Positions 26,305-48,089 of a stretch of DNA of 64,000 bases are shown here, piece after piece. The translations under genes were made by a program, and so were the position numbers. The first letter of the stretch is position 1, and each line of letters opens with the position of its first letter. The stretch is from Diplonema japonicum (taxonomy: Eukaryota > Protista > Euglenozoa: Diplonemea), in contig OZ025705.1 in NCBI GenBank assembly GCA_964019335.1, positions 434,001 through 498,000 of the forward strand, read 5' to 3'. The notes beneath the pieces are model-generated. The model made no database searches, had not been told where the DNA came from, and worked only from the letters and a program-made list of their open reading frames with translations.

Positions 26305-29043
26305 TTAGAACTTTGCATCGTCAACAGTGTTGACCTCTTCCACCATCGCCCCGCTTCTGTTCTCCAAGAGCGTGTCTATCTTCTTGTGCAGCATCGCTAA
26401 GGTTGCAGTCTCTCTCATCTCTTCAATTTCTGTGACGTTGGTATCTTTTGGGTAGTTCTGCTCCACAATATAGACAACGAAGGCAAGGCCCACAGCAATG
26501 GCGTACCCCACAAAGGCACCACCCATGTCCGCGGCTGTGATTTTCTGCGTGGAGCTTGCAACAGGCCCTGTCACAGGGCACACACCGCTTGTGAAGTATC
26601 TGTGGTACAGCCCTTTTATATCCGTCTTCGCGATGTCCTGCCCGGATGTTATCTTCACAAGCCTCCTCGACAGTTCTGCCGCGTACCCCCACTGTCTACG
26701 CACAGCCAGCGCATAAGAGACTTGTCCTGTTTTACTGCCAAAGGTTCGCAGCGGGCACCCTCTCGTTGTGCCCCACTCGTTGACTAAGTATTCTGCAATA
26801 GGCGACTCTTCCACAAGCATTTTCAGTTCACTGTTCATTACTTTCTCAGACAGCTGCTCCGTCACTATTGACTCAAAGTAAGTCCCGCCGTTTGTCTGCG
26901 CGCTCAGCACATCCATTGCCACACTGCCTGTTTCGACGCCCACCTGGTTCGGGAGGATCGTCACACCGATATCAGTTATCTCTGGCCCGTTGCTCCCCGT
27001 CGACGCCACCAAGAAGGCCGCCAGGTTGGCCGTGTAAGCAGCTATCACAAGCATCGTCACAAAGAACAACGCCCACGATGAGATCTTCCCCGCGTACGTC
27101 TTGGGGGTCATGTCCTGGCAAGCGAGAGAGGCTGTGAAACTGAACCAGAGCGACGCAGCAAGGCCTTCCGGAACAGGTACCTCGGCAAGGTCTTCGTGGT
27201 CTTTCCTTTCAAAGACGTAGAATAGGAAACCTGCAAACACCACCCAGCCAAACCACAACAGCCACATGTCAGAGGCAAAGGGACCAACGAAGTGCCACAG
27301 GTCATATGTCTGAGTGGCATCCGATACACGCCCCACAGCAACTATACCGTCTGTCCAGTAGGGATGTGTGTACTCGACGTTGTTGAAGATCAGCGTCTCA
27401 AGTTCTTTGCTTTCCGAGAACCCTGTTATGGCAGGGTGTAGTGCAATGTGGCCTACCACCATGTCGGCCTCGCCCCTTGCGATCATTGATATAAGCTCGA
27501 AATCCGTGTAGTTTCCCAGCGTGATGTTCGCGGCAAACCCAAGCTGGTCCTGCAGCAGCTTGAATATATCGCACGCAAAACCTTCGGTCGTGTTGCTCTC
27601 CTGCGGGTTGGCCAAGTGGCAGAACGGCCAAAGCGACAGCGAGATGACCACCTGGGCTGTGATAGCCGACAGCGGTGGCCTGTCATTTGGGATTGCGATG
27701 TTGGACCGGTTCCATGTCAAGCTGTCCAGCCGGAACACCCCTTTTGCGGCGTTCCAGTCATGACCCTCGCCAGACACCTCCCCCGATGGCACCGCAGATA
27801 GCTCAGTGGAGTTCCATACTAGCTGGCTGCCTTTCACTTTCCATCCGGATAATCTGTGATCATCGAATTCTATCTCATTTGTGAGCCCAACGTGTTTTAT
27901 CTCGCGCAGCACGTTCCTAAGGAGGGGGCCGTGCTGCCATTTGTGGTGCGATCCTGTAAAGGGCGCAACCGTGCCAAGTTGGTGCCCTCCATCGGAGATC
28001 TGGTCGGCAACCTGCAGAATGGCCTTCCCAGCCAGCATTGCAATATCATACACGGCAACCGTCGATTTGAAAGGTTCAACCATCCCAGCAGGAGGGAACG
28101 CCCTTGCCATCGGAGAGCTCCACTTAGCCAGGAAGTCTTTGCTAATGATGTCATTGTCGAAGATACCGTCCGTCAGCACGTTTTGAAAGACAGGCCCTAA
28201 TTCGTCGGGTTCCACCTCCGAGAGTCCTTGCATCATCCAGATGTAGTCCAGGCTCAAGAGCCCCATCGAATGGGCCTCACCTAGGATACTCGTGGCGTGC
28301 TGCTTGTCAGCAACAAGGAAGAACACCGTAGCACCATTGCTTTTGAACCGCTGAAGGGCAGCCTTAATGTTGTCGGGTTTGTTTTGCTGGATAGCAAACG
28401 AGCCCAGCAGCGTGACTCCGTTCTCGAGGCAACGCGAGAGGAAGTGCTGCACGCCGTTGACACCGTCTGCATCCTTCGTGTAGATCACGGCGACGCGCTT
28501 GATCTCAAGCCGCTTCATCAGCTGCTGGAAGAACTCGCTGTGGTGGTCGTCACCCTTGATAGGCTGGAAGAAGTATTCGCTGCCCACAGTGATGAATGGA
28601 TCGGTGGCGGCGGGTGTGATCATGGGCACCTGGAAGTAGTCACCGTGCACGCGGAGGTCCAGTGCCACTGCCGAGAAATACGGACCTATCACCAATGCTT
28701 GCGGCCGTGCCTGCAAAGCATCCACAAGCGATGCATACATGTAATAGTCGTTGCCCACCCAGTTCTTGTTGAATGAATCAGGGCCGTACTGCTTTCCAGA
28801 ACCAGTTGATCCCTCATTAGCTTCGGGGTACTTTTGGTTTACAATGATGGATGTCAGCACCAGCTTGTGCTTCCCGCCCTGCGTCAGCACCGTGTCGCGG
28901 TTGAGTTCTTCTACCGCGAGATTTGCGGCTGCAACAGCAGTGCTCCCATGAGGAGTGTCACTATATTCCAAGACTACAGCAATGCCAAAGTCTGTTGCGC
29001 AGCAAGGCACCACTATCGAAAGCAGTGCACAGAGATGTTTCAT
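26305..29043 (-). CDS. Ionotropic glutamate receptor-like ligand-gated channel, 912 aa
   Basis: Signal peptide, periplasmic-binding ATD (VIGPYFS), S1 (EGFACDI, GEADMVVG), M1 (PFASDMW), pore loop LWFSF, M3 AYTANLAAFL, S2, M4 (MGGAF). Confidence 0.93.
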   Translation of the reverse strand: MKHLCALLSIVVPCCATDFGIAVVLEYSDTPHGSTAVAAANLAVEELNRDTVLTQGGKHKLVLTSIIVNQKYPEANEGSTGSGKQYGPDSFNKNWVGNDYYMYASLVDALQARPQALVIGPYFSAVALDLRVHGDYFQVPMITPAATDPFITVGSEYFFQPIKGDDHHSEFFQQLMKRLEIKRVAVIYTKDADGVNGVQHFLSRCLENGVTLLGSFAIQQNKPDNIKAALQRFKSNGATVFFLVADKQHATSILGEAHSMGLLSLDYIWMMQGLSEVEPDELGPVFQNVLTDGIFDNDIISKDFLAKWSSPMARAFPPAGMVEPFKSTVAVYDIAMLAGKAILQVADQISDGGHQLGTVAPFTGSHHKWQHGPLLRNVLREIKHVGLTNEIEFDDHRLSGWKVKGSQLVWNSTELSAVPSGEVSGEGHDWNAAKGVFRLDSLTWNRSNIAIPNDRPPLSAITAQVVISLSLWPFCHLANPQESNTTEGFACDIFKLLQDQLGFAANITLGNYTDFELISMIARGEADMVVGHIALHPAITGFSESKELETLIFNNVEYTHPYWTDGIVAVGRVSDATQTYDLWHFVGPFASDMWLLWFGWVVFAGFLFYVFERKDHEDLAEVPVPEGLAASLWFSFTASLACQDMTPKTYAGKISSWALFFVTMLVIAAYTANLAAFLVASTGSNGPEITDIGVTILPNQVGVETGSVAMDVLSAQTNGGTYFESIVTEQLSEKVMNSELKMLVEESPIAEYLVNEWGTTRGCPLRTFGSKTGQVSYALAVRRQWGYAAELSRRLVKITSGQDIAKTDIKGLYHRYFTSGVCPVTGPVASSTQKITAADMGGAFVGYAIAVGLAFVVYIVEQNYPKDTNVTEIEEMRETATLAMLHKKIDTLLENRSGAMVEEVNTVDDAKF

Positions 29044-29119: not shown

Positions 29120-32100
29120 CTATTGTCTGCTAGGGGTGGAGTACTGAGGGGATTTTAGGATCTCGTTCAGCACTAGCGGCGGCGAGGGCAGTCTCCTGGC
29201 AGCTTGCTCTTCAGCCTCCATTGTGGCATATTGGTGCTGACCATTTTTGTATGCTGCTGAGTCCTGCAGCACCCGAGTCCTTTGTGTTCTAGATTGCTCT
29301 ACAGCTTCATTGAAGCTTTCCTGCGTCACAGCAAAGTCACGCTGCCTTCGCAGTTGGTAGCTTTCCGTCTCCCGTGCTTTCAGTTCACGTGCTTCGAACG
29401 CTTCTGCCTGTAAGGCTGCCGCAATGGCTTTCTTCCCAATGTTTTCTTGTGCTTTCCGGATTTTTTTATGTCGTTCAACTTCTTGTCTCTGCACCCGAAG
29501 CCTGTGGGCTTCGATAAGAGCGTGCTCCGTGACCTCATCTTCCATCTGCTGCTGCATGAGGAACTTCTCCATCCTGTAGCGTGATTACCTTTTTTCCTTT
29601 GTTTTCATACTTCCTCTCTTCCACGGCCTTCACCTGCGCTTGTCGTCGCGCTTCATTCGCCTTCCATTGTGCCTCGCGCTGTGGTGTTGCTTTTTATTGC
29701 CGGTTGTCTAATCAATACCTCATCAGCGGCATTCCTCCGATTTGCGGACTGCGCGAAGTCGTCTTCCATAAGGACACGCTGCGTGTCCAGGGCCAGCATC
29801 ACCATGTGCTGGCGGAAGATACGAGAGTCCACGTCGTACTCTGTCTGTGCCCTTGCACGCTCGGTCAGCTGTCGGAGGAGCTTTGTCCTGCATAGCCAAC
29901 CCCGAAGTGTCCTTTGTATTTGAGTAGCAGCGTCGTCCAGAAGCCTCTGTGCTTCTTCTTCGCGTTCTATCTTCTCTTGCTCCTCACGTTCCTCCCTCTC
30001 AGATACCATCTCCTCGATCACCGCAAACATGTTCTCAAAGTCCTCCATCAACTTGGTCCACTCTCTGTGCTCCTGCTCTACAATGTTGTTCCCCGCCGTG
30101 TCAGCGTCGCGCCCTATATTAGCAAGCCCGTCTGCAATGGCAGCCAGCGCTTCCCTCTCCTCGGCTTCCCGTGCTTCCCTCTCAGCCCTCTCAGATTCAT
30201 ATTTTGCTCGCACCTCGCGGCGAACCTCCTCCCGCATCTGGTCGACGGCAGCTTTGTTCGCGTCGTAGACGACTTGCTGTGATGATGCGTGAAATGATGT
30301 GAACGCCAGTATACCTTCAATCCTATGATGGCGAGATACGCTCTGCAGTGAGCAAGGAACACCACGTTGTGCAGCTCCAGTTTGATCTTCTTGAGCTTCT
30401 CGAGCTCAACGTACGAATCCGACTTCAGGAAGACACGTGCCTTGCCGATCTGTGAACAGTGACATGAAAAAAGGCTTGCATACCTGTGCCGTCTTCGGGT
30501 CCAAACCTGAATTATTGATGATGGCTTGGCACCGATCCTTCGCCTCAGTGCCCGTGGTGCCTATGATGCTGTACGCTTCGACGAAATGCTCGAACTGGAT
30601 GCGGACAGGGAAACCTGCCTTTCGTATCTTTACAGTGCCAAGGACACCCGAAGAGGCCAGCTGCTGCATGGTCTTAACGCCATGGAAGCTAAGAGGCTTC
30701 TTGGCAGGGTGGGGCTTGACACACCTAATCCAATGAGGGTTCGTGCTGTTGATGAGATCCATCAAGTCAGCCACTTGGCTTTTGAAAAACCCACCGACAG
30801 TCATTTTTTTGGACTGTGCGGGGGGGAGGAGGGTGCAGATCAGAGCGTCAGAAGAAGCGCGCATCAAGTTCACAAAAGCAATCTTGAGAGTGTCCCTGTT
30901 CTTGTCAAGGAAGTTGGCGATTTCATAGGACACAGACCCTGCGTAGTGGTGGATGATGAAGGACGCTTTTGCGAGCGTTTTCTTCGTGAAGAACTCTTTG
31001 TAGGCATCGCCAGAGCACGCGTCCACTGTCTTGGAGAGGAACGACTCGTCCGAGCCAGTGCCTAGAGCACACTCTTCATCGAGCATGGCGAATATGCCAC
31101 CCTTGCCGGTGATCATGCGCAGGCAGGGGCCGTTGTCAGGGAATTCGACAGCAGTGACATCAATACCCTCAGTACGGCACTCATCCATGTCCTTCTCGAA
31201 GATGTATTTGTTGTAGTGGTTCTGAAGGGACTCGTTCGCAAGGTTGATGCACAGCTGCTCGAAGGAGTTGATCTCGAAGTCCTCAAAGCCGAAGATGTCA
31301 AGGAGACCAATCCACCTTCCGTCGCCTTCCACGTTGAGGGTATTGTTACATGTTTCGATGATCCACGAGAACTGGTGGTCGTAAAGGGTCTTCGTCAGTG
31401 CCGACCGCCCATCCCTCGCCTTCATGGGGTTAAGCAGTGTTTCCACAGGCCCGTCACGAGTGTCAAGCGTTGTGGTGATTAGCTCTTTTGTAAACACGGC
31501 TCCGTCTATGCTCCACGCCTTCACCGTCTTGTCTACCCACTGCTGGCTGTTCTTCCCGATCTGCGACCCCTCACCACTAGCTTCGAAGTCAGCGTTTTCC
31601 AAGTTAAGAACACCCGCTACCACCTTCCAGATAGACTCGATAGTCTCTACCGACACGCCTAGTGTTTGCAAGTTCGTGTTGATCTCGACAAATTCTTCCG
31701 CAGTGTCGAACTCTTTGTTCGCAGACTGTTTCCCCGCTGATGTGCTTCTGTAGTCCGTGTCGCTGAGGATGTCCCACTTGGCCTTGTCCGATGCGCGGCA
31801 TAGACAGTAGAAGGAGTGGTACACACGCTCTCCTGGTGATGCTGTTACGATCCTGCTCTTCTCCAGCAAGTACTTCGTGATGTGCGCACCGACAAGAAAC
31901 CCCGAATCGTCAAACTGGACTTTCATCCACTTCCCGAAACGACTGGAGTTGTCGTTTCGCGCTGTCCTGGCGTTTCCGAAGGCCTCCAGCGGCGCCGACG
32001 TAATGTTGATGTTGCTGCCTACCGCGACCGCCGCTTGCTTCTGCGCGTCGGAACCGCTCTTGCATGACAATGCTGCTAAATATTTCATGACGATTTTACT

Positions 32101-32670
32101 GGCCTCGGTTTTACCGGCGCCACTTTCACCAGACACCAGGATGCACTGGTTCACAGGGTCATGCGTTGCGTTGCGCATCTCCCAAAAAGTATTGTGCGCG
32201 GTGGCCCAGGAGTGAGGGATATTTTCCTCGATCCTGTCTCCCTCGGCGAGGTACTTTCCCATGTTGTCGTCGGTGTACCAAGGGATCTTGAAGTTGAAGG
32301 GGTTCAGCGCAACAGTAATGGCACCGATGTTGGTGTAGATGTAGTCGGAGAAGTATCTCTTTCTCAGGACATTGAGGAGGGTCGAGTCGTGCAGCACTGT
32401 GAGGCTCAGCAGATCCAGCACGTTCTCATCGAGTACTTCTTGGTTGCAGCAAAAGACGTCCTCCGCGGAAAGCTTAGCTAGCTGTTCACCTGTCTCCCAT
32501 GTGAACAGTGGATTGGTGTTTTCGTGAGCCTTGCAAACAGCGGTCTTCCCATCCCACGATATTACCTTACCATAGCTCCATGCATGCTCTTCGTGGTTGA
32601 ACAAGCACAGCGAACCCACCTCAGGGTCGAGTACCGCTTCTTTTTTCTTCTCATTTTTCTTCGGTGGCAT
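29120..32670 (-). CDS. Myosin heavy chain (~1133 aa) with IQ motif(s) and coiled-coil tail, 5 exons
   Basis: P-loop GESGAGKT, LEAFGNART.RNDNSSRFGK, LDIFGFE, FEQLCIN.ANE, WIRCVKP, IQRTLRGW. Introns 30450-30483, 30277-30314, 29679-29718, 29574-29610 join four listed ORFs into one frame (..KTAQ|IGKARVFLK..). Confidence 0.93.
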
Positions 32671-32808
32671 ATTATCACCCACCACCCCCCCCCCCCCCCC
32701 CCGACCTGCAGTGGTTCAGTTTTGCAACAACAAAATCGTAACTAAGAGGGTAATAGACATGGTGTCAAGGGTAACAATAAGCAATGTTGGTGGTGAGCAC
32801 CGAAAGAA

Positions 32809-35610
32809 CTAATTGACCGTCACCCTGTTTTCCACGCTCATGCAAGGGGAGGATTGGTCACCCATTTGAATAGAAGTGGGGGACTGTCGTAAAAGATACT
32901 CCTCTTCTTCAGTGTCCACCTCCGAAAACCCGAGCAGTTTGTGTTCATGCAGCACCATTCCAAAAGTAACCAACACTATTCCAACCCAAAGAAGGCTGTA
33001 GGTGGTACCGGGGTTGCCCCCCATCAGGGTGTCGTTGGATAGGATGACATTCAGAATGGGGAGAGAGATAAGTAATGCAATAAACTGGCACGACGGGCCA
33101 CCACGCATCACCACGACTGTATTGATGATAATGTAAGCAACATTACCAAGATTGAAACCCAGGACCCACACCCAAGCGTATTCACACTGGGTTGTGAGCC
33201 ACCAATCACCACTGCCACCAAGGTTCATAGACGAAGACGTGTTTCCTGTGGACAGACACACCATCCCATCGCCATAGTCCTCATTAATAAGGGAGTTAAC
33301 ATCCGTTGTGGCCACCAAACCGAACAGCATCGACACCAAAGGGGCTAGCAACACCGACCCGAGATTCATGAGCAGAACCAGGTACAACACATCCAGCATT
33401 GTGACCGGCCTCGTTGCTTCTCCAAAGAGTCTTTGTGTTACAATGTCGAAGCATGCCTGCACAAGACATGTGATGCTGTACGTTACGATCCAAATAGAAA
33501 ACGTGCTCATGGACAACCCCTTTTCAGATGGTTCGCGCCCAACGAACACCACCACACCACTCACTACCAGCGAGCAGCCAATGATCTGCAAAATTCCGTA
33601 GCGCGACTTGTTGAACAAGTACCCACCGATAGCAGTGAAGGGCACCGTGAATTGGTTCAGCAGCGTGGCAACGTTCACGTTTGAGGGGCCCAGGGCATCG
33701 ATGGCGGCGACCTGTATCACATTCGTGATGGCGAACAGTACCCCGAGCACCATGAGGGGCTTCATCGGGAGGGTTAAAAGAGCGGATCGCCGCATTTCAG
33801 GATTGCTGCTAGAGTATCCCCGCAGTACCAGGTATAAGACACCACTGATTGCGAAGGACAGCACTGCGTTCACGAGGGAGGTGAGGTACGGGAAAGGGTG
33901 CATCACAAAAACCTCTCTGTAGAACAAGAACTGTGTCCCGGTGAAAGTGAAGGCATTGAGAAGCGTGTAAGCTGCAGCGCATAGGACGTCGCGAGCTGTT
34001 CTTGGCCGAGGTTCCTCATCATCCGACTCAGGCTCCAGATCAAGACCAAACATACACTCGTTGTTCTTACAGCTGGCGTTCAGAGAAGGCTCCTCAGCAC
34101 AAGTATCCACGTACCACTGCTTGCGCTTCTGTTCCTCCTGTGCGCGTGTCAGCTCGCCTTGCAGCCTGCCCAAGTGTCTTTGTGTGCGCTGTAGTTGTAA
34201 GGCTGCCTGCTCAACCTGAACCTTCAGCGTGGGAACTGCCAGGATAGCCTGTTCGCGCGCAGTAGCTTGTTGCTCCGTTCGCACTTTCAGCACTTTCGTG
34301 ATGAATGCCGACACCGAGGCAGAGTCCGTCAAGTCGTCTGTGCGCAGCCTTACCTGTGTCTTAACTGCTTGCAGGGCAATACTCTCCAAGGCCGAGTTGC
34401 CATTGACCATAACCAAAGCAGCAACTAGTTTTTGGTTCTCCAGCCATGCAGCAAATATGTGGGAATCAGTGTATTTGTACTCCACCGTGCAGTCGGGGGA
34501 CACGAGGCCGCAGAAACGCCAATTCAAATCGTACAGAGTGTTTCTTAAATCAGGAAAATAAATATACGGCACTGGAGCAGTTGCACAACGCATGGTCCTT
34601 GCTAGGTGTTTGGCCATCATCTTCGCAAACTCCGCGTCTCGGCAATTCATAGTTTGCGAAGTATCCGTATAATTCGGCCTCACGTGCAGCACTGCCACCT
34701 CACCAATGGCATACACACCCTCAACAGAAGTGCACATGTTCTCATCCACCTGTATGCCCGGTGGTTCGTTGATGTACTCCAGTTGGTCACCGAAAAGGTC
34801 GATGTTCGGCATGGCGCAGTTCCCGTAGATCAGCACATCGCATTCGACCCCTTTTTTGTTGGACAGCTGTACACCTATGATGGTGGAGTCCTTCGATACA
34901 ACCTGTGTGATGGTTGTTTCTTTGTATATTGTTGTTCCCATCTCTTCCAGTTTGTCTTCGTACACTTTCGAGATCTCCTTTGTGAACAGTGCGGGGAAGA
35001 GCTGCGATTCCTCAAGCACACAGGTCACTGACATGTCCCAGGAAGTCGTAAGCGCTTCCATAATGTCCATGTGTAGACACTCGCCTCCCAGAACTACGGC
35101 CTTGCCACCACGACACTTCTCGAGTGTGTTTCGTAAGGACAGTCCGTCGGTGTAGTTCAGTAGCTTGTGGCATCCTTTGGTATGATTTCCGGGAATTGAA
35201 ATACTAGGGGCCGTCTTTGAGCCTGTTGCAATCACAAGCCCCTTCCGCCACGAGACACCAACCACCAGTCCATTCTTATCTTGGTAATGAATGGTTTTGT
35301 TCTTGATGTCCACCTTCGTGCAAGGACTGTTCAGCAGCACAGTGATCCCATGTGCGTTGTACCAGTCCTCTGTCTTGGACGCGGTGTGGTGCTCTGCAAG
35401 CTTCTCGGCTGTGAGGAGGAAGCCTTTGCTGAGGAACGATCTTTCGTAAGGGTAGACACCCTCAGCAGACACAAGACAAATATCAGTACCAGAGCCTCCC
35501 TTCTCGATGTACTCTGCAATGAAGTGCCCGCCGGCAAAACCCCCTCCGAGGACTACGATCTCGTACTCAGCATTTCCTTTCGCGGAGTTGCTGAGCTCAA
35601 GTGTTGTCAT
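32809..35610 (-). CDS. Fusion protein A: monodehydroascorbate-reductase-like flavoprotein + coiled linker + CRT-like (DMT superfamily) transporter, ~933 aa
   Basis: N-half: IVVLGGGFAGG, PYERSFLSKG, IATGS, KAVVLGG, PALFT, VYAIGEVA, WRFCG, collinear with plant MDHAR. C-half: about 10 hydrophobic helices with FPYL, LLNQFTVPFT, RYGILQIIGCSLVVSGV and a two-Cys loop (DGMVCL..QCEYAW..FN) typical of CRT/CLT. ATG 35610 follows a CAG and aligns with the paralogue start. Confidence 0.85.
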   Translation of the reverse strand: MTTLELSNSAKGNAEYEIVVLGGGFAGGHFIAEYIEKGGSGTDICLVSAEGVYPYERSFLSKGFLLTAEKLAEHHTASKTEDWYNAHGITVLLNSPCTKVDIKNKTIHYQDKNGLVVGVSWRKGLVIATGSKTAPSISIPGNHTKGCHKLLNYTDGLSLRNTLEKCRGGKAVVLGGECLHMDIMEALTTSWDMSVTCVLEESQLFPALFTKEISKVYEDKLEEMGTTIYKETTITQVVSKDSTIIGVQLSNKKGVECDVLIYGNCAMPNIDLFGDQLEYINEPPGIQVDENMCTSVEGVYAIGEVAVLHVRPNYTDTSQTMNCRDAEFAKMMAKHLARTMRCATAPVPYIYFPDLRNTLYDLNWRFCGLVSPDCTVEYKYTDSHIFAAWLENQKLVAALVMVNGNSALESIALQAVKTQVRLRTDDLTDSASVSAFITKVLKVRTEQQATAREQAILAVPTLKVQVEQAALQLQRTQRHLGRLQGELTRAQEEQKRKQWYVDTCAEEPSLNASCKNNECMFGLDLEPESDDEEPRPRTARDVLCAAAYTLLNAFTFTGTQFLFYREVFVMHPFPYLTSLVNAVLSFAISGVLYLVLRGYSSSNPEMRRSALLTLPMKPLMVLGVLFAITNVIQVAAIDALGPSNVNVATLLNQFTVPFTAIGGYLFNKSRYGILQIIGCSLVVSGVVVFVGREPSEKGLSMSTFSIWIVTYSITCLVQACFDIVTQRLFGEATRPVTMLDVLYLVLLMNLGSVLLAPLVSMLFGLVATTDVNSLINEDYGDGMVCLSTGNTSSSMNLGGSGDWWLTTQCEYAWVWVLGFNLGNVAYIIINTVVVMRGGPSCQFIALLISLPILNVILSNDTLMGGNPGTTYSLLWVGIVLVTFGMVLHEHKLLGFSEVDTEEEEYLLRQSPTSIQMGDQSSPCMSVENRVTVN

Positions 35611-36265
35611 GTACCTGTTGTAAGGTGGGATGTGAGAACAATGAAGGACAATAAAAAGCGAACAGTTAATGCAATGCAGAACCAAGGGGATGACCCCACA
35701 GGGGCAGTAATTAGTCATTCAGATGCGATACCAAGTTCGTATCTTAGGTACTGGTCAACCCTCTCTTTTATTCCTCCACGGGGCCACAGGTGTAACAAGC
35801 TAAAGTAAACCCATCGAATACTAAGTCGAGGGGCAAAGTAAATTAAAAAAATATCGAAAAGGGTGTTCAAAAAAGGGGAGGGGGGCGCTTAAAGAAAATA
35901 TAAAAAAGAGTATCGGGTTATCTGACAAAATTATCAGGCATATTGGGTTCTGGCCCTGCTCCCTTGACGCGGTCTTCAAGTATCGTCCATGTTCTTGGAG
36001 CCCATATTGGCAGCCTTCTCAACTTGCAGCATAGCGGCTTACTTGTTGTTGACAATAGGTGAATGACTAAGGTTAATTAGCCTTAAAAAAGGGAATAAAT
36101 ACCATATTTTGCAGAGATCCGGCAGAAGAACAACAGCTTGCTTATCAGCTGCTTGACAACGGCAATAATAATTTTAAAAAAAATGGACTAAAAGGACTTG
36201 TTGGCGTTGTTTTTAAAGACTTGTACGTTTTTTTTTTTCCCTTTCTCCCTTTCCCAAACTATTAA

Positions 36266-39034
36266 CTATAAGTTAAGTTGCACGTGTAAACCAGATGAAG
36301 GAGAGTGTAAGTTGGGAGAGGACACAGAGCTGCGAGGAGAGCGCGCGTGGCACAAGAGGGACGCGCGCTCCTCATCAGTCGCCTTCTTCATGAAGTTGCC
36401 ATGCTCATGAATCAACAGGCCCACGCAAAACATCGCAACGCTTGCCCAGAGGAGACCGGATAATGATCCAGCATGGCCGCCCATCAGGGTGTCGCTACCA
36501 AGCAGTGCATTGAGTACTGGCAGTGCTATTAGCTGTGTAAAGAATTGAGCCGTGGTGCCGCCCTTCATGAGGATCAATGTACTGATCAAGCAGTATAGGA
36601 CACTGCTAAGATTGAAACCCAGGACCCACACCCAAGCGTATTCACACTGGGTTGTGAGCCACCAATCACCACTGCCACCAAAGTTTCTGGATGAAGACGT
36701 GTTTCCTGTGAACAGACACACCATCCCATCGCCATAGTCCTCGTTCATAAGGGTGCTAACATCCGTTGTGGCCACTGACCCGAACAGTATCGACACCAAA
36801 GGGGCTAGCAACACCGATCCGAGATTCATGAAAAAAACCAGGTACAACACATCCAGCATTGTGACCGGCCTCGTTGCTTCTCCAAAGAACTTCTGTGTCA
36901 CAATGTCGAAGCATGTCTGCACAAGACATGTGATGCTGTACATTACGATCCATGCCACGTACTTGCCGGTGGAAATGTCGGTGGGCCCATCGGCAGAGAA
37001 GACAGCAAGACCACCTACCATTAGCAAAGAGCCCATGAGCTGCACTACCTTATAAGGCGACTTGTAGAGCAGATACCCGCCGATAGCAGTGAAGGGCACC
37101 GTGAATTGGTTCAGCAGCGTGGCAACGTTCACGTTTGAGGGGCCCAGGGCATCGATGGCGGCGACCTGTATCACATTCGTGATGGCGAACAGTATCCCGA
37201 GCACCATGAGGGGCTTCATCGGGAGGGTTAAAAGAGCGGAAAGCTGCATCTCGGAATGGTCGGAGTATCTCTGCAATGCCAACAGCAAGACACCACTGAT
37301 TGCGAAGGACAGCACTGCGTTCACGAGGGAGGTGAGGTACGGGAAAGGGTGCATCACAAAAACCTCTCTGTAGAACAAGAACTGTGTCCCGGTGAAAGTG
37401 AAGGCATTGAGAAGCGTGTAAGCTGCAGCGCGCGCGCTAAAAGGCACTTTGTTCTGGATCTCGGGGAAAACACTATTGACTACGTTCTCCCCTCCCGTGT
37501 AACCGACCGAGAAGGAAAGGTCTTCCTTTTGCAGGATATGGTTAGTGAACCAGGTAAATGTTTGTTGGGCTTCAAGGACGTTAGTTAACTCTCTTTTGAG
37601 CTTCTGCACCTGTTCCAGTGCCCGTTCCACTTGATAGGATGCCTGCTCGATCTCCATGTTCAGCACAGGTACTGTTAGGACGGCTTCCTCACGCGCTATC
37701 GTGCTCTCTCTTATTTTGTCCCGTAGAATCTTTTTGACAAACACCTTCACAGGGGAATTGTATGCCATTTCTCCCGGTTGCAGATTCACCTGCATCTTGA
37801 CAGCCTGTCGGGTAACGAGCTCCATTTCAGTATCTCCCCTGCCTTCTACAAAAGCAGCAACTAGCTTGTCATCCTTAATCCACACGACGAAGAAGTGCGG
37901 TTCGGTTAGCAAATACTCTATCGTGCAGTCGGGGGATGTGAGACCGAAGAAGCGCCACTTCATATCATACAGAGAACTGTGGAAGTCAGGAAAGTACATG
38001 TACGGGCTCCTTGACACGACGCCAGTCAAGACAGCAGCTAAGTGCGTGGCCATCATCTTGCTGAGGAATTGGTCAGCACATTTAATTGTTTGCGAGATGC
38101 CTGCTTCCTTATTGTTAATGTGCAGCACTGCCACCTCACCAATGGCATACACACCCTCAACAGAGGTGCACATGTTCTCATCCACCTGTATGCCCGGTGG
38201 TTCGTTGATGTACTCCAGTTGGTCACCGAAAAGGTCGATGTTCGGCATGGCGCAGTTCCCGTAGATCAGCACATCGCATTCGACCCTTTTTTTGTTGGAC
38301 AGCTGCACACCTGACACTTCTGAGTCCTTTGTAGTCACCTGTGTGACGGCTGTTTCTCTGTGAAGATCTACACCCATCTCCTCCAGTTTGTCTTCGTACA
38401 CTTTCGAGATCTCCTTTGTGAACAGTGCGGGGAAAAGCCGTGGTTCCTCAAGCACACAGGTCACTGACATGTCCCAGGAAGTCGTAAGCGCAACAATGAT
38501 GTCCATGTGTAGACACTCGCCTCCCAGAACTACGGCCTTGCCACCACGACACTTCTCGAGTGTGTTTCGTAAGGACAGTCCGTCGGTGTAGTTCAGTAGC
38601 TTGTGGCATCCTGGGGCGAGGATGCCAGGAATTGAATCAGGGGCCGCCTTTGAGCCTGTTGCAATCACAAACCCGTTCCGCCACGAGACGGTGGAAGGCA
38701 AGCCATCCTTGTCGCAATAGAAAAGAGTTTTGTTCTTGATGTCCACCTTCGTGCAAGGACTGTTCAGCAGCACAGTGATCCCATGTGCGTTGTACCAGTC
38801 CTTTGTCTTGGACGCGGTGTGGTGCTCTGCAAGCTTCTCGGCTGTGCGGAGGAAGCCTTTGGTGAGGAATGGCCTATCGTAAGGGTAGACACCCTCAGCA
38901 GACACAAGACAAATATCAGTACCAGAGCCTCCCTTCTCGATGTACTCTGCAATGAAGTGCCCACCGGCAAAGCCCCCTCCGAGGACTACGATCTCGTACT
39001 CCGGACCCTCCCCTGCGGCATTCATGGTAGTCAT
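36266..39034 (-). CDS. Fusion protein B: tandem paralogue of the MDHAR-like/CRT-like fusion, 922 aa
   Basis: Same uninterrupted architecture; long blocks of nucleotide identity with 32809-35610. Confidence 0.87.
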   Translation of the reverse strand: MTTMNAAGEGPEYEIVVLGGGFAGGHFIAEYIEKGGSGTDICLVSAEGVYPYDRPFLTKGFLRTAEKLAEHHTASKTKDWYNAHGITVLLNSPCTKVDIKNKTLFYCDKDGLPSTVSWRNGFVIATGSKAAPDSIPGILAPGCHKLLNYTDGLSLRNTLEKCRGGKAVVLGGECLHMDIIVALTTSWDMSVTCVLEEPRLFPALFTKEISKVYEDKLEEMGVDLHRETAVTQVTTKDSEVSGVQLSNKKRVECDVLIYGNCAMPNIDLFGDQLEYINEPPGIQVDENMCTSVEGVYAIGEVAVLHINNKEAGISQTIKCADQFLSKMMATHLAAVLTGVVSRSPYMYFPDFHSSLYDMKWRFFGLTSPDCTIEYLLTEPHFFVVWIKDDKLVAAFVEGRGDTEMELVTRQAVKMQVNLQPGEMAYNSPVKVFVKKILRDKIRESTIAREEAVLTVPVLNMEIEQASYQVERALEQVQKLKRELTNVLEAQQTFTWFTNHILQKEDLSFSVGYTGGENVVNSVFPEIQNKVPFSARAAAYTLLNAFTFTGTQFLFYREVFVMHPFPYLTSLVNAVLSFAISGVLLLALQRYSDHSEMQLSALLTLPMKPLMVLGILFAITNVIQVAAIDALGPSNVNVATLLNQFTVPFTAIGGYLLYKSPYKVVQLMGSLLMVGGLAVFSADGPTDISTGKYVAWIVMYSITCLVQTCFDIVTQKFFGEATRPVTMLDVLYLVFFMNLGSVLLAPLVSILFGSVATTDVSTLMNEDYGDGMVCLFTGNTSSSRNFGGSGDWWLTTQCEYAWVWVLGFNLSSVLYCLISTLILMKGGTTAQFFTQLIALPVLNALLGSDTLMGGHAGSLSGLLWASVAMFCVGLLIHEHGNFMKKATDEERASLLCHARSPRSSVSSPNLHSPSSGLHVQLNL

Positions 39035-39867
39035 AAGCCTGTGCTAAGTGAGTACATTCAGGACTAAAAAGATATATTCATTATATGGCGTGTGGACAAT
39101 GCCGACAACTTACAATATTAATTTAATAATAAAAACTGCTTGTTAAGGTGGTCCTAATAGTTACTTCACACAATGTGGTCCAACAATCCCGCATTCGGGA
39201 GGGCTATCGGATGTTAGCGTTACCAAAGGGGAGGGGGGGAGGGGGTGTTAAATAAATATAATGAGTCATACTACACTATATATAACTCAGGATTCTGGGG
39301 CTCCCTTTTTTTTTTCCTGCCCTCGGGTCGGGCAATAAGCAAAAAAAGGAAACGAGTGACAACGTTGCAATATAAAAACTGAAAATACTAAGAAAAAGAG
39401 CCAGATTCGTGCCACGGTAGGCACCAAGGAGAGTTTGACCGAGACACCACCGCCTCTTGTCCGCCGTCATTCAACAACGCTGACATAGTGAAACTTCATT
39501 ATGAAGTGCTTCGTGTCGTTGAATGAAAAAGTGCTGTAAAAAAAAGGGGGCTTCTTCACCTGCCCTGTCCGTCCTGGTGGGGACGTCCAGTTACCGGTTC
39601 AGGCCTTCGAAGTTGCGTGAAAGAAAAAGAAAAAACTAAAAAAGGAAAAAAAAAAAGAAAGAAATCTAAATATCACCTGCTAGGTGTTAGCAATGACTCA
39701 TCAAGGGGGGAGGGAACATGTCACATTGATCACGAGGGCAGAATGTGATTAAGAATAGCTATATTCATCATTGGTGTGAGAACTAGTCTTTATATTTCCC
39801 TATAAACTGAAACAGAAGGGGCGGGTGTGTAAAGAAGGAAGAAAAAGAGAGAGAAAGAGACTATTTG

Positions 39868-43809: not shown

Positions 43810-46800
43810 TTATTCCTCTTCGCTGCTGGACCAGTGCTCACCGAGCTCCTTGGCCTTCTTCTTGGCGAGCTCACGCTGCTTCTTCTCCTTACGGGTAAGC
43901 TTCTTCTTCGCCTGCTTAACCTGTGGGGGGAAAAGGGTTCATTTTAATAATAATAATAATAATTATTTTTTTTTTCTTTAAAACATACCTTGGTAACGTT
44001 ACCAAGTGCGTCGACCATCTCCTCCATGGCAACGCTCTCTGTCTTCTCCTTCATGACGGCCTCCATCCAGTCAGCGTCACCCTGACAGTCGAGGCGGCCG
44101 ATACCGTCGTCACCCTTCTCGACCAACCAGGTCTCGGGGCAGAGGGCCTTCGAGAACTGGTCGTTATGGGTGATGATCACGACTCCTCCCTTGAACTGCT
44201 CGATGGCGCCGGCGAGGGCGGCGAGGGACTCCCTGTCCAAGTAGTTGGTGGGCTCGTCCAGGATGACGATGTGTGGCTGGTCCCACATCGCAGCTCCGAG
44301 CACAACCTTCACCTTCTGTCCACCGGAGAGCTGCGACATCTGGGTGTGGGTAGCGTGTTCCCTTTCCATCCCGACGTCCACGAGGAGCTTCTCGACGTTG
44401 GACTGGGTCAGAGGCCTCTTGAACCTGTTATGAAAAGAAAAAAAATAGTAATATTATACTTTTTTTTTTTTTAATATACCTCCCCTCCTCAGCAAGGATC
44501 TTCTCAGCAGTCTGCTTAACGTGCTTGCCCCAACCACCTTCCTCAAGCTTGTCCTCGTTGATGAAACCAGTAGGACCCTCACCGCTGCCCTTGGTGGCGA
44601 ACCTAACCTCGTACATGTACCCAGCCCTCTTCTGGTTCTTACGGACACCGGTAAGCTTCTCGATGACGTGCTTCTGCCTCTTCAGACCCTCGTCGTCGGT
44701 GAACTCCCAGGTCCTCACCTCCAAGAGCTTCTTCTCCTCCTCCTCGGTGAGGATCATGGTGACCTTCTCCAAGGCCTCCTTGTCGGTACCGTATTCGTAC
44801 CTCCAGAGGATGTACTCGGTGGGGGTCATCTTCAAGTGCTTCTCAATGTGATGGAAAGCGTGCTGGGCAACGTAGGCGACCTTCGCGTTGGGGTTCTTCC
44901 AGGTCGTACCCTTGTCCGGGTTCAGCTCTCCGGTCAACAGCTTGATCATGGTCGACTTACCGGCACCGTTGGGACCGAGACAGGCGACCCTGCTTCCCAT
45001 GGACACCCTCACGGTGAGGTTCACGACGGTGGGCTTCGGGTTCCCGGGGTAGGTGAAGTCAACCTTGTCCATCTTGATAAGCACCTTACCCCTCGAGCTC
45101 ACGCCCTCCAAGAAACCAGGGTCCGGGAACCTGAAGGAGAGACCCTTCGACGACTTCAGCTCGAAGTAGGACTTCGCCTCGGGGAACTCCTCCACGAAGG
45201 CCTTGATGCTCCCCTTGAAGTTGTGGAGACGGAGGTTGTCGATGTGGATGATCCTGCTGCAGCAGGTCTCCAGGAGGTGCGCGTTCTGCGACACGATCAT
45301 GCAGGTCACGTCCTTCAGCCCCCTGATGTAGTCCTCCACCCAGGCAACGTTCTTCACGTCCAAGTGGTTCGTGGGGTCGTCCATGAGCAGGATGTCGGCC
45401 TTCTGAAGCATCGCCCTTGCGAGGGCGAGCTTCATCCTCCACCCACCGGACAGCGAGGACACGGGGTCCATGATCCTGGCGGCCTTCCCGCCCTGCTCGC
45501 CGGTTCCTGCGAACCCGACCTTGTCGAGGGCCGAGATGACGGCGTCCTTCGAGATGTTCGCGGCCTTGATCCTGGAGTCCTCGAAGATGTACTCGAGGCA
45601 GGTCAAGTGGGACAGCTCTCCGAGGATGTCCGCCTCGACGAACACGGTCCTCACCTCTGTGCTGGGGGGGAAGCCCTCCACCTGGTCGTTTGCGATAGCC
45701 TTCAGGAGCGAGGTCTTCCCGCTGTCGTTTCCACCGAGAAGCCCGTACTTCGCACCCTTCAGGAGGCGAAGCTGCGTGTTCTTCAGAAGGATCTTGGTAC
45801 CGTAGGCAAGGGTGAAGCGGCAGTTGCAGAGCTCCGCCGCGTCCTCCTCCTCCTCGATCACGGTCCCGGTCATCGCGTTCTCGCACTGCTTGAACAGCAT
45901 CTCACCGAGGGTGTCCGCGTCCTTCTCCGTCTTGCACACGGACAGAAGGTTCTTCGCCCACACCTTCGGCTGCATCACCTTCATCTCGAAGTTCGAGGCG
46001 CAGAGGTCGGCCACGAAGGCGAGGAGCACGGGGTCCGACACCGTCACCCTCTTGTCCTTCTGCAAGACCTCCAGGAACTTCTTCGAGTCCATGGACTGCG
46101 ACTTCAAGAGGTCGACGTTCTTCTTCAACTTCTCAATCTGCAGCTGAACCTTCCCGCACACCTCACGGCACTCGGGGTCGGCAACGTGGATCGCCGCCTG
46201 CTCCAGGGCAGGGGTCAGCTTGGGGATCAGGGGCTCCGCCTCCGTCGCCACCTCCACAAGCTTCGACAAGTTGTCCGTGATCTTAGCCGACTGCCTCACG
46301 ATCTTCTTCTCACCCTCACGGAAACCACGGACCAACAAGGGGGTGATGATCGCGAGCTCGGGCCTCTCCACCGTCGCCACGAACTTCGTGCACGAGAGCT
46401 TGAAGATGGAGTCGGGAACGTTGTCCGGCTCCATCAGCGCCTCCACCAGAACGGGGATGAGCTCCTCGACGTCCTTGTTCTTCACCACGTCGGTGATCGC
46501 CTTCAGGGTCTGCTCCGCCTCCTCGCTCACCTGCACCTTGGTGTCGTGGAGAAGGTCGCACACGGCGGGCACGAGCTCGGGCATCGACACGGACACGGCC
46601 CCGGGGCAGTCCCTCGCGAACCTCCCGATCGACTCCAGACCAGCCACCTTCACCTGGAACTTCGTCGAGTCCAAGCAGTGCATCATCTCTGCCATGGTCG
46701 AGCAGGCCACAGCGGGGTTCGACGCCGCACGACCCACGAACTGCATCGCCGCGTCGTGAGCCGCCTTCGCCACCGTCTTCGCCTTGTCACCCACGAGCTG

Positions 46801-47079
46801 GAAGACCACGGGGAACAGCTTGATCACGTAGGCCTCCAGGTGGTTCTTCAGGTCCGCCGAGAGGGACCCGAAAGCGAGGCACGCCGCCTCCCTCTTCGCC
46901 TCAGCCTTCTTCCCGCCTCCGGTAGCGGTCTCGATGGCCTGGAAGAGACCAGCCTCCGCGAGGGCCGCTCCGTCCACCTCCCTCACCATCTCTGCGAGCT
47001 TCTGCGCCGCCTCCACGGAGGGCTTCGCCTCCAGCTCGGAGAACATCTTCACGGACTCAGTTGCAAGTTGGGGTGCCAT
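43810..47079 (-). CDS. Elongation factor 3 (eEF3/New1-type ABCF), copy 1, ~1048 aa, 3 exons
   Basis: HEAT repeats, ELCNCRFTLAYG, LSGGWRMKLALARAML, GPNGAGKST, AYVAQHAFHHI, chromodomain-like insert, LSGGQKVKVVL, LDEPTNYLDRESL, DALGN and a Lys-rich tail. Introns 44425-44479 and 43921-43988; stop TAA at 43810. Confidence 0.94.

Positions 47080-48087: not shown

Positions 48088-48089
<2 letters not shown>

What the first reader, a model, noticed from the sequence alone, without database searches (positions are those of the whole stretch)
32809..39034. Tandem genes fusing an MDHAR-like flavoprotein to a CRT/CLT-family transporter: candidate redox-coupled or redox-gated thiol transport system
Seen: two intact, intronless ORFs each join about 440 aa of reductase fold, a coiled-coil linker and about 10 TM helices. 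Occurring twice with diverged linkers argues against an assembly chimera. Established: MDHAR recycles ascorbate in the ascorbate-glutathione cycle, plant CLT proteins export glutathione/gamma-glutamylcysteine from plastids, and PfCRT moves peptides and drugs across the digestive vacuole. I know of no described protein combining these domains. Inference: an organellar transporter physically coupled to a flavin module that senses or relays the ascorbate/glutathione redox state.
Basis: partly seen in the sequence, partly recalled or inferred. Interest (0 to 1): 0.9.

Follow-up and report, generated by a model that had tools for sequence, protein, structure and literature searches.

The report
MDHAR-like domain fused to CRT-like transporter
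Two neighbouring genes of a diplonemid-like protist each encode one protein that joins a monodehydroascorbate-reductase-type flavoprotein to a ten-helix CRT-like membrane transporter; this very rare design is otherwise found only in two diplonemid proteins, and here the reductase half has lost its NAD(P)H site and catalytic tyrosine.

Summary
Both ORFs are real, 67% identical, and carry Pfam Pyr_redox_2 (MDHAR type) plus CRT-like.

- **Transcripts:** contigs of a closely related strain (95-99% identical) carry the spliced leader 4 nt upstream of each ATG and span both linkers. Each gene therefore gives one fusion mRNA. Gene A starts at 35610, not 35718.
- **Distribution:** an exhaustive HMMER search of 1.84 billion cluster representatives found one fused relative (P0015). 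A follow-up search found its Flectonema neradi homologue, a complete transcript ORF. The four transporter domains form one clade, so the fusion arose once. It looks diplonemid-specific and I found no paper on it.
both window copies have lost the NAD(P)H motif (GGGYIG reads GGECLH), E314/H315 and the catalytic Tyr349 (now His or Arg), and have a shortened active-site loop. The diplonemid orthologues keep all of these. The transporter half lies outside the characterised CRT/CLT clade, so a thiol substrate is unsupported. The linker is a conserved heptad helix.
- **Most likely function:** a transporter with a cytosolic flavoprotein module on a coiled-coil stalk, catalytic in diplonemids and non-catalytic here. 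The substrate is unknown.

The same stretch was also noted by other first readers of this scan.

The parts
36266..39034 (-). Gene B: complete CDS, 922 aa plus stop, MDHAR-like + coiled-coil helix + CRT-like transporter
   Evidence: ORF; Pfam; SL joined at 39039
32809..35610 (-). Gene A: complete CDS, 933 aa plus stop, from the ATG at 35610. The ORF's upstream ATG at 35718 lies 5' of the SL acceptor and is not in the mRNA.
   Evidence: N-terminus MTTL conserved with the orthologues
39039..39040 (-). Trans-splice acceptor AG of gene B; the 5'UTR after the SL is 4 nt (GCTT)
   Evidence: X1 loose end at 39039 is the reverse complement of GCTACAGTTTCTGTACTTTATT; sequence; this SL 23-mer occurs 214 times in the genome against 0 for the control
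35615..35616 (-). Trans-splice acceptor AG of gene A; the 5'UTR after the SL is 4 nt (GTAC)
   Evidence: X1 loose end at 35615 is the reverse complement of CTGTACTTTATT; sequence
37796..39001 (-). Gene B MDHAR-family flavoprotein domain (residues 12-413)
   Evidence: PDB phmmer best hits are plant MDHARs at E 2e-44, next family 2e-20; Foldseek top hits are MDHAR; Pfam MDHAR3-like_C 27.8 bits
34360..35568 (-). Gene A MDHAR-family flavoprotein domain (residues 15-417)
38507..38524 (-). Gene B degenerate NAD(P)H dinucleotide motif GGECLH (canonical GGGYIG; includes the Tyr174 position, now Cys)
35071..35088 (-). Gene A degenerate NAD(P)H dinucleotide motif GGECLH
37973..37993 (-). Gene B FPDFHSS, equivalent to MDHAR LPYFYSR; catalytic Tyr349 is replaced by His352
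34537..34557 (-). Gene A FPDLRNT; the catalytic Tyr349 position is Arg
38057..38080 (-). Gene B CADQFLSK, equivalent to MDHAR (x)EHVDHAR; E314/H315 lost, Arg320 is Lys
37529..37750 (-). Gene B linker helix (residues 429-502), amphipathic heptad/coiled-coil type, with the conserved motif VPxL..EQA..L..EL
   Evidence: AF2 single helix, pLDDT about 77-89; same heptad register in all 4 fused proteins; invariant columns
34093..34314 (-). Gene A linker helix (residues 433-506)
36344..37435 (-). Gene B CRT-like DMT transporter domain, 10 TM helices plus a helix in the TM7-TM8 loop (residues 534-897)
   Evidence: Pfam; AF2 pLDDT 87.8, pTM 0.86; Foldseek top hit PfCRT 6ukj at E 7.6e-8, TM 0.68/0.75; VIA-align Z 26.7 over 335 residues
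32890..33996 (-). Gene A CRT-like DMT transporter domain (residues 539-907)
36638..36730 (-). Gene B acidic TM7-TM8 loop with two family-conserved Cys (C773, C797) and an N-T-S sequon; predicted extracytosolic
   Evidence: Cys nearly invariant across 42-52 CRT-like sequences; loop charge counts; coordinates

Best explanation
Each gene encodes one polypeptide made from one spliced-leader-capped mRNA. It has three parts: a cytosolic N-terminal flavoprotein domain derived from monodehydroascorbate reductase, a conserved amphipathic (coiled-coil-type) helix of about 70 residues followed by a short disordered tether, and a 10-TM transporter of the DMT superfamily that belongs to Pfam CRT-like but to a divergent, uncharacterised branch of it. 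The fusion arose once in the diplonemid lineage. In the two diplonemid orthologues (P0015 and Flectonema neradi P0100) every MDHAR cofactor and catalytic motif is intact, so there the protein is most likely a membrane-anchored active NAD(P)H-dependent reductase joined to the transporter. In this genome both tandem paralogues keep the FAD-type motifs but have lost the NAD(P)H-binding glycines, the nicotinamide-site Glu-His and the electron-relay tyrosine. Here the domain is most likely a pseudo-reductase that serves as a non-catalytic regulatory, scaffolding or dimerising module on a still-constrained transporter. Shown: architecture, transcription as one unit, orthology, motif states, fold. 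Inferred: N-in topology with the flavodomain in the cytosol, loss of catalysis, dimerisation through the helix. Unknown: substrate and membrane.
For: - ORFs and domains.
- SL joined 4 nt before each ATG, and X1 contigs 33880-34607 and 37331-37792 bridging the reductase C-domain, linker and TM1 in A and B: with acceptor AGs seen and the SL confirmed genome-wide.
- Full-length colinear orthologue P0015 (35% identity over 949 aa) and the Flectonema complete transcript ORF P0100.
- Fused transporter domains are monophyletic, SH-aLRT 100.
- MDHAR is the closest family: E 2e-44 against 2e-20 for the next.
- Catalytic residues are defined experimentally in PMC5031999; their states in the six sequences are.
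- N-domain-specific extra divergence: 129-140 bits against 173-179 bits to a canonical MDHAR, while the transporter domains score equal or better than the orthologues' (Pfam scores).
- Constraint persists: dN/dS 0.25 in the unconverted C-domain; patchy gene conversion elsewhere.
- Conserved heptad helix.
- Transporter fold.
- Topology: the TM2-TM3 loop has 11 K/R in P0015 and 7 in P0100 (only 1-3 in the window copies); the TM7-TM8 loop is acidic and Cys-bearing in all four and carries a sequon in the window copies only.
- No other MDHAR-family gene in this genome.
Against: - No biochemical data. Loss of NAD(P)H binding and catalysis is inferred from motifs only.
- The N-domain AF2 model is poor (pLDDT under 50 over residues 263-359), so the site geometry could not be inspected.
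- The RNA evidence consists of short contigs from a related strain (95-99% identity), not full-length reads of this strain. Minor internal trans-splicing or proteolytic cleavage in the disordered tether (residues 503-533) cannot be excluded.
- dN/dS estimates are blurred by gene conversion and by synonymous saturation.
- Coiled-coil dimerisation was not modelled.
- The organism's assignment as diplonemid-like rests on the SL type and on the absence of TryS/GspS. Another agent's note calls it a kinetoplastid.
Confidence: 0.6

Rival explanations
1. Redox-coupled or redox-gated transport. The flavodomain is still redox-active here: FAD is retained and is reduced by a donor other than NAD(P)H or by a partner protein. 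It either reduces the transported solute (ascorbate radical, dehydroascorbate, a thiol/disulfide, or Fe3+) at the cytosolic mouth of the transporter, or gates the transporter according to redox state.
For: FAD-side motifs are kept: GGGFAG, PY(D/E)R, IATG, and GE in place of GD. The orthologues have a fully intact MDHAR site, so coupling is plausible ancestrally. The genome has APX-type peroxidases and an ALO-family oxidase, so ascorbate chemistry is plausibly present. It has no other MDHAR-family gene. From my own knowledge, characterised CRT-family members move glutathione, gamma-glutamylcysteine, peptides and iron.
Against: Two of the three glycines of the NAD(P)H motif are replaced (by Glu and His). 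E314/H315 and R202 are lost. The electron-relay Tyr349, whose mutation abolishes OsMDHAR activity, is His or Arg. The former active-site segment is the least conserved part of the N-domain between the paralogues (47% identity, residues 301-330). The transporter is outside the characterised CRT/CLT clade.
Confidence: 0.22
2. The transporter domain is just a membrane anchor. The 10-TM domain only tethers a cytosolic flavoprotein or scaffold to a particular membrane, as the single C-terminal TM helix does for plant peroxisomal MDAR4, and it does not transport anything relevant.
For: Membrane-attached MDHAR isoforms exist in plants (abstract of PMC8615211). No substrate can be inferred here.
Against: A 10-TM DMT fold with pLDDT around 90, with conserved polar residues inside the helices (N620, Q623, Q643, Q706, N737, N808, Q830, N842) and family-wide conserved loop cysteines, is far more than an anchor needs. 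The window copies match canonical CRT-like proteins better than the diplonemid orthologues do, which indicates maintained transporter constraint even where the reductase decayed.
Confidence: 0.08
3. Two proteins come from one ORF. The fusion ORF is processed into a separate soluble flavoprotein and a separate transporter, either by minor internal trans-splicing or by proteolysis in the disordered tether.
For: A disordered, poorly conserved segment (B residues 503-533, pLDDT 35-41) lies between the helix and TM1. The contig data cannot exclude minor isoforms.
Against: No SL-bearing loose end was reported inside either linker, while both 5' ends show one. Contigs bridge both junctions. The Flectonema Trinity transcript encodes the whole 974-aa ORF. 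The order reductase-helix-transporter has been kept colinear at 35% identity, and the helix itself is conserved.
Confidence: 0.06

Closest known systems
Plant monodehydroascorbate reductase (OsMDHAR, PDB 5jci/5jcm; 6krt; 7bq6)
   Same: It is the best sequence match of the N-half (E 2e-44 over about 400 residues) and the best Foldseek match. The three-part FAD/NAD/C-terminal layout is shared, Pfam MDHAR3-like_C matches in gene B, and the FAD-side motifs are kept.
   Different: Here the domain is fused to a transporter. The NAD(P)H GxGxxG motif reads GGECLH, Tyr174 is Cys, R202 is Ala, E314/H315 are lost, Arg320 is Lys, catalytic Tyr349 is His or Arg, and the 63-80 active-site loop is 6 residues shorter. 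The diplonemid orthologues keep these features.
PfCRT (PDB 6ukj) and the Pfam CRT-like family PF08627 (PfCRT, TgCRT, plant CLT1-3)
   Same: Pfam CRT-like scores above the gathering cut-off (84 and 80 bits against 26.9). PfCRT is the top Foldseek hit with the longest structural alignment (335 of 350 residues, Z 26.7). There are 10 TM helices with a helix and conserved cysteines in the TM7-TM8 loop.
   Different: Direct sequence search against PDB chains does not find PfCRT. In the tree the fused clade lies in a divergent group separated from canonical CRT/CLT proteins (about 330 bits on the Pfam model) by a branch with support 100. No characterised member carries an N-terminal enzyme domain. 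The substrate is unknown.
SLC35 / nucleotide-sugar and triose-phosphate DMT transporters (SLC35B1 9i20, Vrg4 9s36, TPT 5y78)
   Same: Same 10-TM DMT fold. The Z score of 27.2 for SLC35B1 is tied with PfCRT. There are weak Pfam UAA/EamA matches.
   Different: Sequence profiles clearly favour CRT-like (E 1e-23 against 1e-3). The alignments are shorter (283 against 335 residues) because these proteins lack the long TM7-TM8 loop.
Diplonemid orthologues P0015 (ENA, unnamed source, 674-kb contig) and Flectonema neradi EP01060_P014194 (P0100)
   Same: Identical domain order, conserved N-terminus MTT, conserved linker helix motif, and 35-36% identity over the full length. They form one clade with the window proteins.
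   Different: They retain GGGYIG, R202, E-H-V-x-H-x-R and the catalytic Tyr, so they are presumably active reductases. Their TM2-TM3 loop is longer and strongly basic. I found no annotation or paper describing them.
Plant peroxisomal membrane MDAR4 (membrane-attached MDHAR)
   Same: An MDHAR held at a membrane, facing the cytosol (PMC8615211 abstract).
   Different: From my own knowledge, MDAR4 uses a single C-terminal anchor helix, not a 10-TM transporter, and it is catalytically active.

Membership tests
MDHAR (monodehydroascorbate reductase, EC 1.6.5.4) | Closest sequence and fold relatives are MDHARs | tested here: met
   phmmer against PDB: MDHARs at E 2e-44, next family 2e-20. Foldseek top 11 hits are all MDHAR. 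Pfam MDHAR3-like_C scores 27.8 bits against a cut-off of 27 in gene B, with no match reported in gene A.
MDHAR (monodehydroascorbate reductase, EC 1.6.5.4) | N-terminal FAD dinucleotide motif GxGxxG and FAD-side motifs | tested here: met
   GGGFAG, PY(D/E)R, IATG present; the GD motif reads GE. Flavin binding itself is not testable here.
MDHAR (monodehydroascorbate reductase, EC 1.6.5.4) | NAD(P)H dinucleotide motif GxGxxG (GGGY174IG) and the NAD contacts R202, E314, H315 | tested here: not met
   GGECLH in both copies; R202 is Ala; E314 is Ala or Arg; H315 is Asp. All are met in P0015 and P0100.
MDHAR (monodehydroascorbate reductase, EC 1.6.5.4) | Catalytic Tyr349 (Y349A/F/W abolish activity) and substrate-binding Arg320 | tested here: not met
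   Tyr349 is His in B and Arg in A; Arg320 is Lys in both. Both are kept in P0015 and P0100.
MDHAR (monodehydroascorbate reductase, EC 1.6.5.4) | Long loop 63-80 that forms the active-site pocket | tested here: not met
   6-residue deletion relative to canonical MDHAR units, and loss of the G-x-G-G segment.
Pfam CRT-like (PF08627), DMT superfamily | Profile match above the curated cut-off | tested here: met
   83.9 and 80.1 bits against 26.9, covering profile positions 18-334 of 335.
Pfam CRT-like (PF08627), DMT superfamily | 10-TM DMT fold resembling PfCRT, with a helix-bearing TM7-TM8 loop and conserved loop cysteines | tested here: met
   AF2 pTM 0.86 with 10 TM helices. 6ukj is the top Foldseek hit. 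Z 26.7 over 335 residues, but tied with SLC35B1 at Z 27.2. C773 and C797 are nearly invariant in the family alignments.
Characterised CRT/CLT clade (PfCRT, TgCRT, AtCLT1-3: drug, peptide, thiol transport) | Groups with canonical CRT/CLT sequences in a tree | tested here: not met
   The fused clade falls in the other of two major groups separated by SH-aLRT 100. Canonical members score about 330 bits on PF08627 against 65-100 bits for this group. The tree used a quick search, LG+G4 and midpoint rooting, and its rows are unnamed metagenomic proteins.
Characterised CRT/CLT clade (PfCRT, TgCRT, AtCLT1-3: drug, peptide, thiol transport) | Transports glutathione, gamma-glutamylcysteine, peptides or drugs | not testable with these tools
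   Needs transport assays.

The most novel reading that the evidence does not exclude
Diplonemids invented a single-chain 'vectorial redox recycling' machine. A transporter for a redox-active small molecule (ascorbate, dehydroascorbate or a thiol) carries its own NAD(P)H-driven reductase at the cytosolic mouth on a dimerising stalk. In this lineage the enzyme was converted into a flavin-binding pseudoenzyme that now gates or regulates the transporter. That would give, within one gene family, both the catalytic and the regulatory state of an enzyme-transporter fusion.
Probability: 0.2. Interest if true: 0.8.

Novelty: new variant of a known kind. Interest (0 to 1): 0.58.

Why it matters
Both halves belong to known families, but I found no description of the combination. 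It was the only fused form to turn up among about 15 billion public protein sequences, which HMMER searched as 1.84 billion cluster representatives.

Diplonemids are among the most diverse marine eukaryotes and their cell biology is barely explored. A lineage-specific enzyme-transporter fusion that exists in an apparently active form (Flectonema, P0015) and in a decayed form (this genome, two copies) is a natural experiment on how an enzyme domain becomes a regulatory or pseudoenzyme module.

It also offers a way into an uncharacterised branch of the CRT-like family, whose best-known member (PfCRT) is medically important and still debated as to its natural substrate.

The practical value for annotation is narrower. 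These genes should not be labelled 'monodehydroascorbate reductase' or 'glutathione transporter' by transfer. Gene A's start codon is fixed by the SL site at 35610.

Tried and rejected
- **Word-indexed protein searches with the window protein.** The whole-protein search and the transporter-half search found no fused relative. They were saturated at 8000 candidates and even missed P0015, so their blanks mean nothing. The exhaustive HMMER run was needed.
- **The look-up of encoding contigs for P0015.** The genomic context and source organism of P0015 could not be examined.
- **JGI metagenome scan with the fused alignment.** It returned only one generic flavoprotein hit (29% identity to the N-domain) and no fused locus.
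- **ESM Atlas with P0015.** It returned only single-domain MDHAR, AIF and ferredoxin-reductase clusters at score 0.78, with no matching architecture.
- **Direct phmmer of the transporter half against PDB.** No PfCRT hit. The relationship is visible only through the profile and the fold.
- **Full-length fold search.** It was swamped by N-domain hits, so the transporter was modelled and searched on its own.
- **A 61-sequence alignment including long multidomain Pyr_redox proteins.** These misaligned onto the transporter half and were discarded. As a result the N-domain had only 4 sequences and its AF2 model is poor.
- **First tree run with the mixture model.** It timed out and was rerun with LG+G4.
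- **Assembly chimera.** Rejected: two copies, genomic contigs at 99%+ identity in several runs, bridging RNA contigs, and orthologues.
- **Contig 'joints' of 3436-3460 nt.** Rejected as real rearrangements. They sit at the identical gene-converted blocks of the two paralogues.
- **Rhodelphis P0101 as a third architecture.** Rejected: it is a tandem double MDHAR without a transporter.
- **Kinetoplastid origin.** Considered less likely: there is no GspS/TryS family match, and the SL is of the GCTACAG type.
No tool was available.
Full report
**Observation.**
- The window carries two intact minus-strand ORFs, 32809-35718 (969 codons) and 36266-39034 (922 codons).
- Pfam places Pyr_redox_2 in the N-terminal half of each (E 1e-37 and 5e-41).
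- Pfam places CRT-like PF08627 in the C-terminal half (E 1e-23 and 2e-22; 84 and 80 bits against a curated cut-off of 26.9, covering profile positions 18-334 of 335). Gene B also reaches the cut-off of MDHAR3-like_C.
- The two proteins are 67% identical over 906 residues.
- The genome (62.5 Mb, 132 contigs) holds only these two copies.
- Every ORF of 200 aa or more that I assigned to a family across the 64 kb lies on the minus strand. This is the polycistronic layout of Euglenozoa.

**One mRNA, one protein.**
- I laid Logan contigs of four public runs on 33400-39300.
- Run X1 is 95-99% identical to the window, so it comes from a related strain or species. It has contig ends at 35615 and 39039 that continue into letters absent from the genome there. 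Reverse-complemented they read CTGTACTTTATT and GCTACAGTTTCTGTACTTTATT.
- That 23-mer (with its final G) occurs 214 times in this genome against 0 for the reversed control. It is the 3' end of the kinetoplastid/diplonemid spliced leader. X1 therefore contains cDNA.
- Both genes receive the SL at an AG acceptor four nucleotides upstream of the ATG...ACAG|GTAC-ATG for A and ...ACAG|GCTT-ATG for B.
- This fixes gene A's start at 35610 (933 aa). The first 36 codons of the ORF lie upstream of the acceptor. The resulting N-terminus MTTLELS matches MTTLDL of the orthologues.
- No SL-bearing end was reported inside either linker.
- X1 contigs 33880-34607 (A residues about 335-577) and 37331-37792 (B residues about 415-568) run without a break from the reductase C-domain through the linker into TM1.
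- The evidence is from contigs, so minor isoforms cannot be excluded.

**Conservation and rarity.**
- Word-indexed searches with the window protein were saturated and found nothing.
- An exhaustive HMMER search used the transporter half against 1.84 billion representatives, standing for about 15 billion proteins. It found exactly one strong hit, P0015 (972 aa, E 9e-67), matching at its residues 555-914.
- P0015 is colinear with gene B over 949 residues at 35% identity and has the same Pfam architecture.
- Searching with P0015 found P0100, a 974-aa complete ORF from a Trinity transcript of the diplonemid Flectonema neradi (EukProt EP01060). It is 71% identical to P0015 and has both domains. This gives independent transcript-level evidence for the fusion in a second lineage.
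- The other long hit, Rhodelphis P0101, is a tandem double MDHAR without a transporter.
- A JGI metagenome scan and the ESM Atlas added nothing.
- In a tree of 70 CRT-like domains the four fused domains form one clade (SH-aLRT 100) on a long stem, so the fusion arose once.
- Four literature searches combining MDHAR, CRT-like transporters, fusion, ascorbate peroxidase and diplonemids/Euglenozoa found no description.

**Which organism.**
- The SL body upstream of the shared 3' end reads ...AAAGCTACAG. It matches only the 'Euglenozoa 14' type listed in PMC3795323, which from my own knowledge is the Diplonema SL.
- The genome has no GspS/TryS family match. All kinetoplastids analysed in PMC7052976 carry TryS, and diplonemids have lost it.
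- HSP90 is closest per residue to the kinetoplastid HSP83 fragments in the PDB.
- I read the organism as a diplonemid-like euglenozoan that is distant from Diplonemidae. Another agent's note calls it a kinetoplastid. This point is not settled and does not affect the main conclusions.

**The reductase half.** It is MDHAR by descent: phmmer against the PDB gives plant MDHARs at E 2e-44 and the next family at 2e-20, and Foldseek agrees. PMC5031999 defines the functional residues of OsMDHAR experimentally:
- Tyr349 relays electrons, and Y349A/F/W abolish activity.
- Arg320 binds substrate; R320A keeps 20% of activity.
- Glu196, Arg202 and Glu314 contact NAD.
- Tyr174, His315 and Phe348 move on NAD binding.
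- Loop 63-80 builds the active-site pocket.

I mapped these through the HMMER alignment (chain index = native + 18) and through an alignment with two canonical MDHAR units. Both window copies show:
- GGGYIG reads GGECLH: two of the three glycines are lost, with a Glu at the pyrophosphate turn.
- R202 is Ala.
- E314 is Ala or Arg, and H315 is Asp.
- R320 is Lys.
- Y349 is His in B and Arg in A.
- There is a 6-residue deletion in the pocket loop.

The FAD-side motifs survive (GGGFAG, PY(D/E)R, IATG, and GE in place of GD). P0015 and P0100 keep every one of the lost features.

The decay is specific to this domain. The window N-domains score 129-140 bits against a canonical MDHAR, where the diplonemid ones score 173-179. 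The window transporter domains score as well as or better than the diplonemid ones against standalone relatives (Pfam scores).

No other MDHAR-family gene exists in the genome, although APX-type peroxidases and an ALO-family oxidase do. This organism therefore probably has no NAD(P)H-dependent MDHAR activity. This supports the separate first-reader note that the domain is a pseudo-enzyme.

**The paralogues.** Codon-level comparison shows a mosaic. Blocks of 96-100% nucleotide identity with pS near 0 alternate with blocks that are saturated at synonymous sites (pS 0.5-0.99). The duplication is therefore old, with patchy ongoing gene conversion. This also explains the assembler 'joints' of about 3450 nt. 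In the unconverted reductase C-domain dN/dS is about 0.25, so the domain is still under purifying selection even though it has lost its catalytic residues. The former active-site segment (residues 301-360) is among its least conserved parts.

**The linker.** AlphaFold2 predicts one continuous helix, residues 429-502 (pLDDT about 77-89), followed by a disordered tether, 503-533. All four fused proteins share V-P-x-L...E-Q-A...L-x-x-E-L in the same heptad register. LIVM occupy 43-64% of a/d positions against 6-23% elsewhere. The linker is therefore a conserved amphipathic, coiled-coil-type element, most simply a dimerisation or stalk helix (inference). It is not a neutral spacer.

**The transporter half.**
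- Modelled alone with 52 sequences it reaches pLDDT 87.8 and pTM 0.86, with 10 TM helices and a helix in the long TM7-TM8 loop.
- PfCRT (6ukj) is the top Foldseek hit: E 7.6e-8, TM 0.68/0.75.
- VIA-align gives Z 26.7 over 335 of 350 residues. This is tied with SLC35B1 (Z 27.2 over 283 residues). The fold alone therefore says 'DMT superfamily', and the CRT-like assignment rests on the Pfam profile.
- Two loop cysteines (C773, C797) are nearly invariant across the family alignments.
- The tree places the fused clade, together with unnamed standalone proteins, in a group separated by a branch with support 100 from the canonical CRT/CLT-type sequences, which score about 330 bits on PF08627. One of the standalone proteins is from the diplonemid Artemidia motanka.
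- Substrate transfer from PfCRT or plant CLTs is therefore weak.

**Topology (inferred).**
- The TM2-TM3 loop is strongly basic in the orthologues (11 K/R in P0015, 7 in P0100), though not in the window copies (1-3 K/R).
- The TM7-TM8 loop is acidic and Cys-bearing in all four proteins, and carries an N-T-S sequon in the window copies only.
- Together with PfCRT's known N-in/C-in topology (my own knowledge), this puts the flavodomain in the cytosol.
- There is no N-terminal presequence: the Rossmann strand begins at residue 12.

**Mechanism.**
- Most likely (about 0.6): a single-chain transporter with a cytosolic MDHAR-derived module on a coiled-coil stalk. The module is catalytic in Diplonemidae and non-catalytic here, where it acts as a regulatory, scaffolding or dimerising part.
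For this genome it needs a non-NAD(P)H route to the flavin (about 0.2).
- An anchor-only role and two-protein processing are less likely.
- The substrate and the membrane are unknown.

**Limits.** No spliced model was needed. No InterPro architecture lookup was available. The N-domain model is poor because only four sequences could be aligned cleanly.

**Verdict.** The feature is real, expressed and conserved. It is a new domain architecture built from two known families, so I class it as a new variant of a known kind. It comes with an unusual within-family contrast between an intact and a decayed enzyme domain. Interest is moderate to high for transporter, redox and protist specialists.

Noticed in passing
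window 44428-47079 and 58654-61305 (minus strand), with 48088-50208 between: An eEF3-like ORF of exactly 883 aa occurs twice (HEAT_EF3_N + ABC_tran domains were confirmed for the first copy only). An HSP90 gene follows the first copy. This looks like a duplicated eEF3-HSP90 unit, as another first-reader note also says.
   Followed up: no
window 26305-29043 (minus strand): A 912-aa ORF with ANF_receptor, Peripla_BP_6 and Lig_chan domains: an ionotropic-glutamate-receptor-like channel in a euglenozoan genome.
   Followed up: no
window about 32680-32705: A homopolymer G run of about 26 nt (read on the minus strand) lies in the short spacer between gene A's stop and the start of the downstream myosin-head ORF (30406-32685).
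   Followed up: no
L007:1460-1530 (G000:C1) and 213 other places: The SL 3' 23-mer is dispersed 214 times through the genome. The copy read in L007 is preceded by a poly(A) tract and followed by GGGTGG rather than a GT donor, so it is a retroposed SL at the head of an element and not an SL RNA gene.
   Followed up: partly
window 33400-39300, runs X1-X4: De Bruijn contigs of all four public runs jump 3436-3460 nt between the two paralogues at their identical (gene-converted) blocks. Short-read assemblies of this locus are likely to be chimeric or collapsed.
   Followed up: partly
P0101 (Rhodelphis marinus EP00736_P010126): A tandem double MDHAR in one 899-aa protein. The first unit has lost the GD motif and has Phe at the catalytic Tyr position, while the second is canonical. 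This would be an independent case of an MDHAR pseudo-domain.
   Followed up: no
G000:C93:384981-385361 and 390462-390842 (L005, L006): Two tandem standalone ORFs of about 360-370 aa give a weak PF08627 match (27.2 bits). In the tree the copy I included (L005) sits on a very long branch, far from the fused clade. They are probably another DMT subfamily.
   Followed up: partly
G000 whole genome: No PF03738 (glutathionylspermidine/trypanothione synthetase) match. There are ten class-I haem peroxidase (PF00141) matches, three of them inside very long ORFs (1332-1535 aa).
   Followed up: no
window 10555-18339 (minus strand): A single uninterrupted ORF of 2594 aa; not examined.
   Followed up: no
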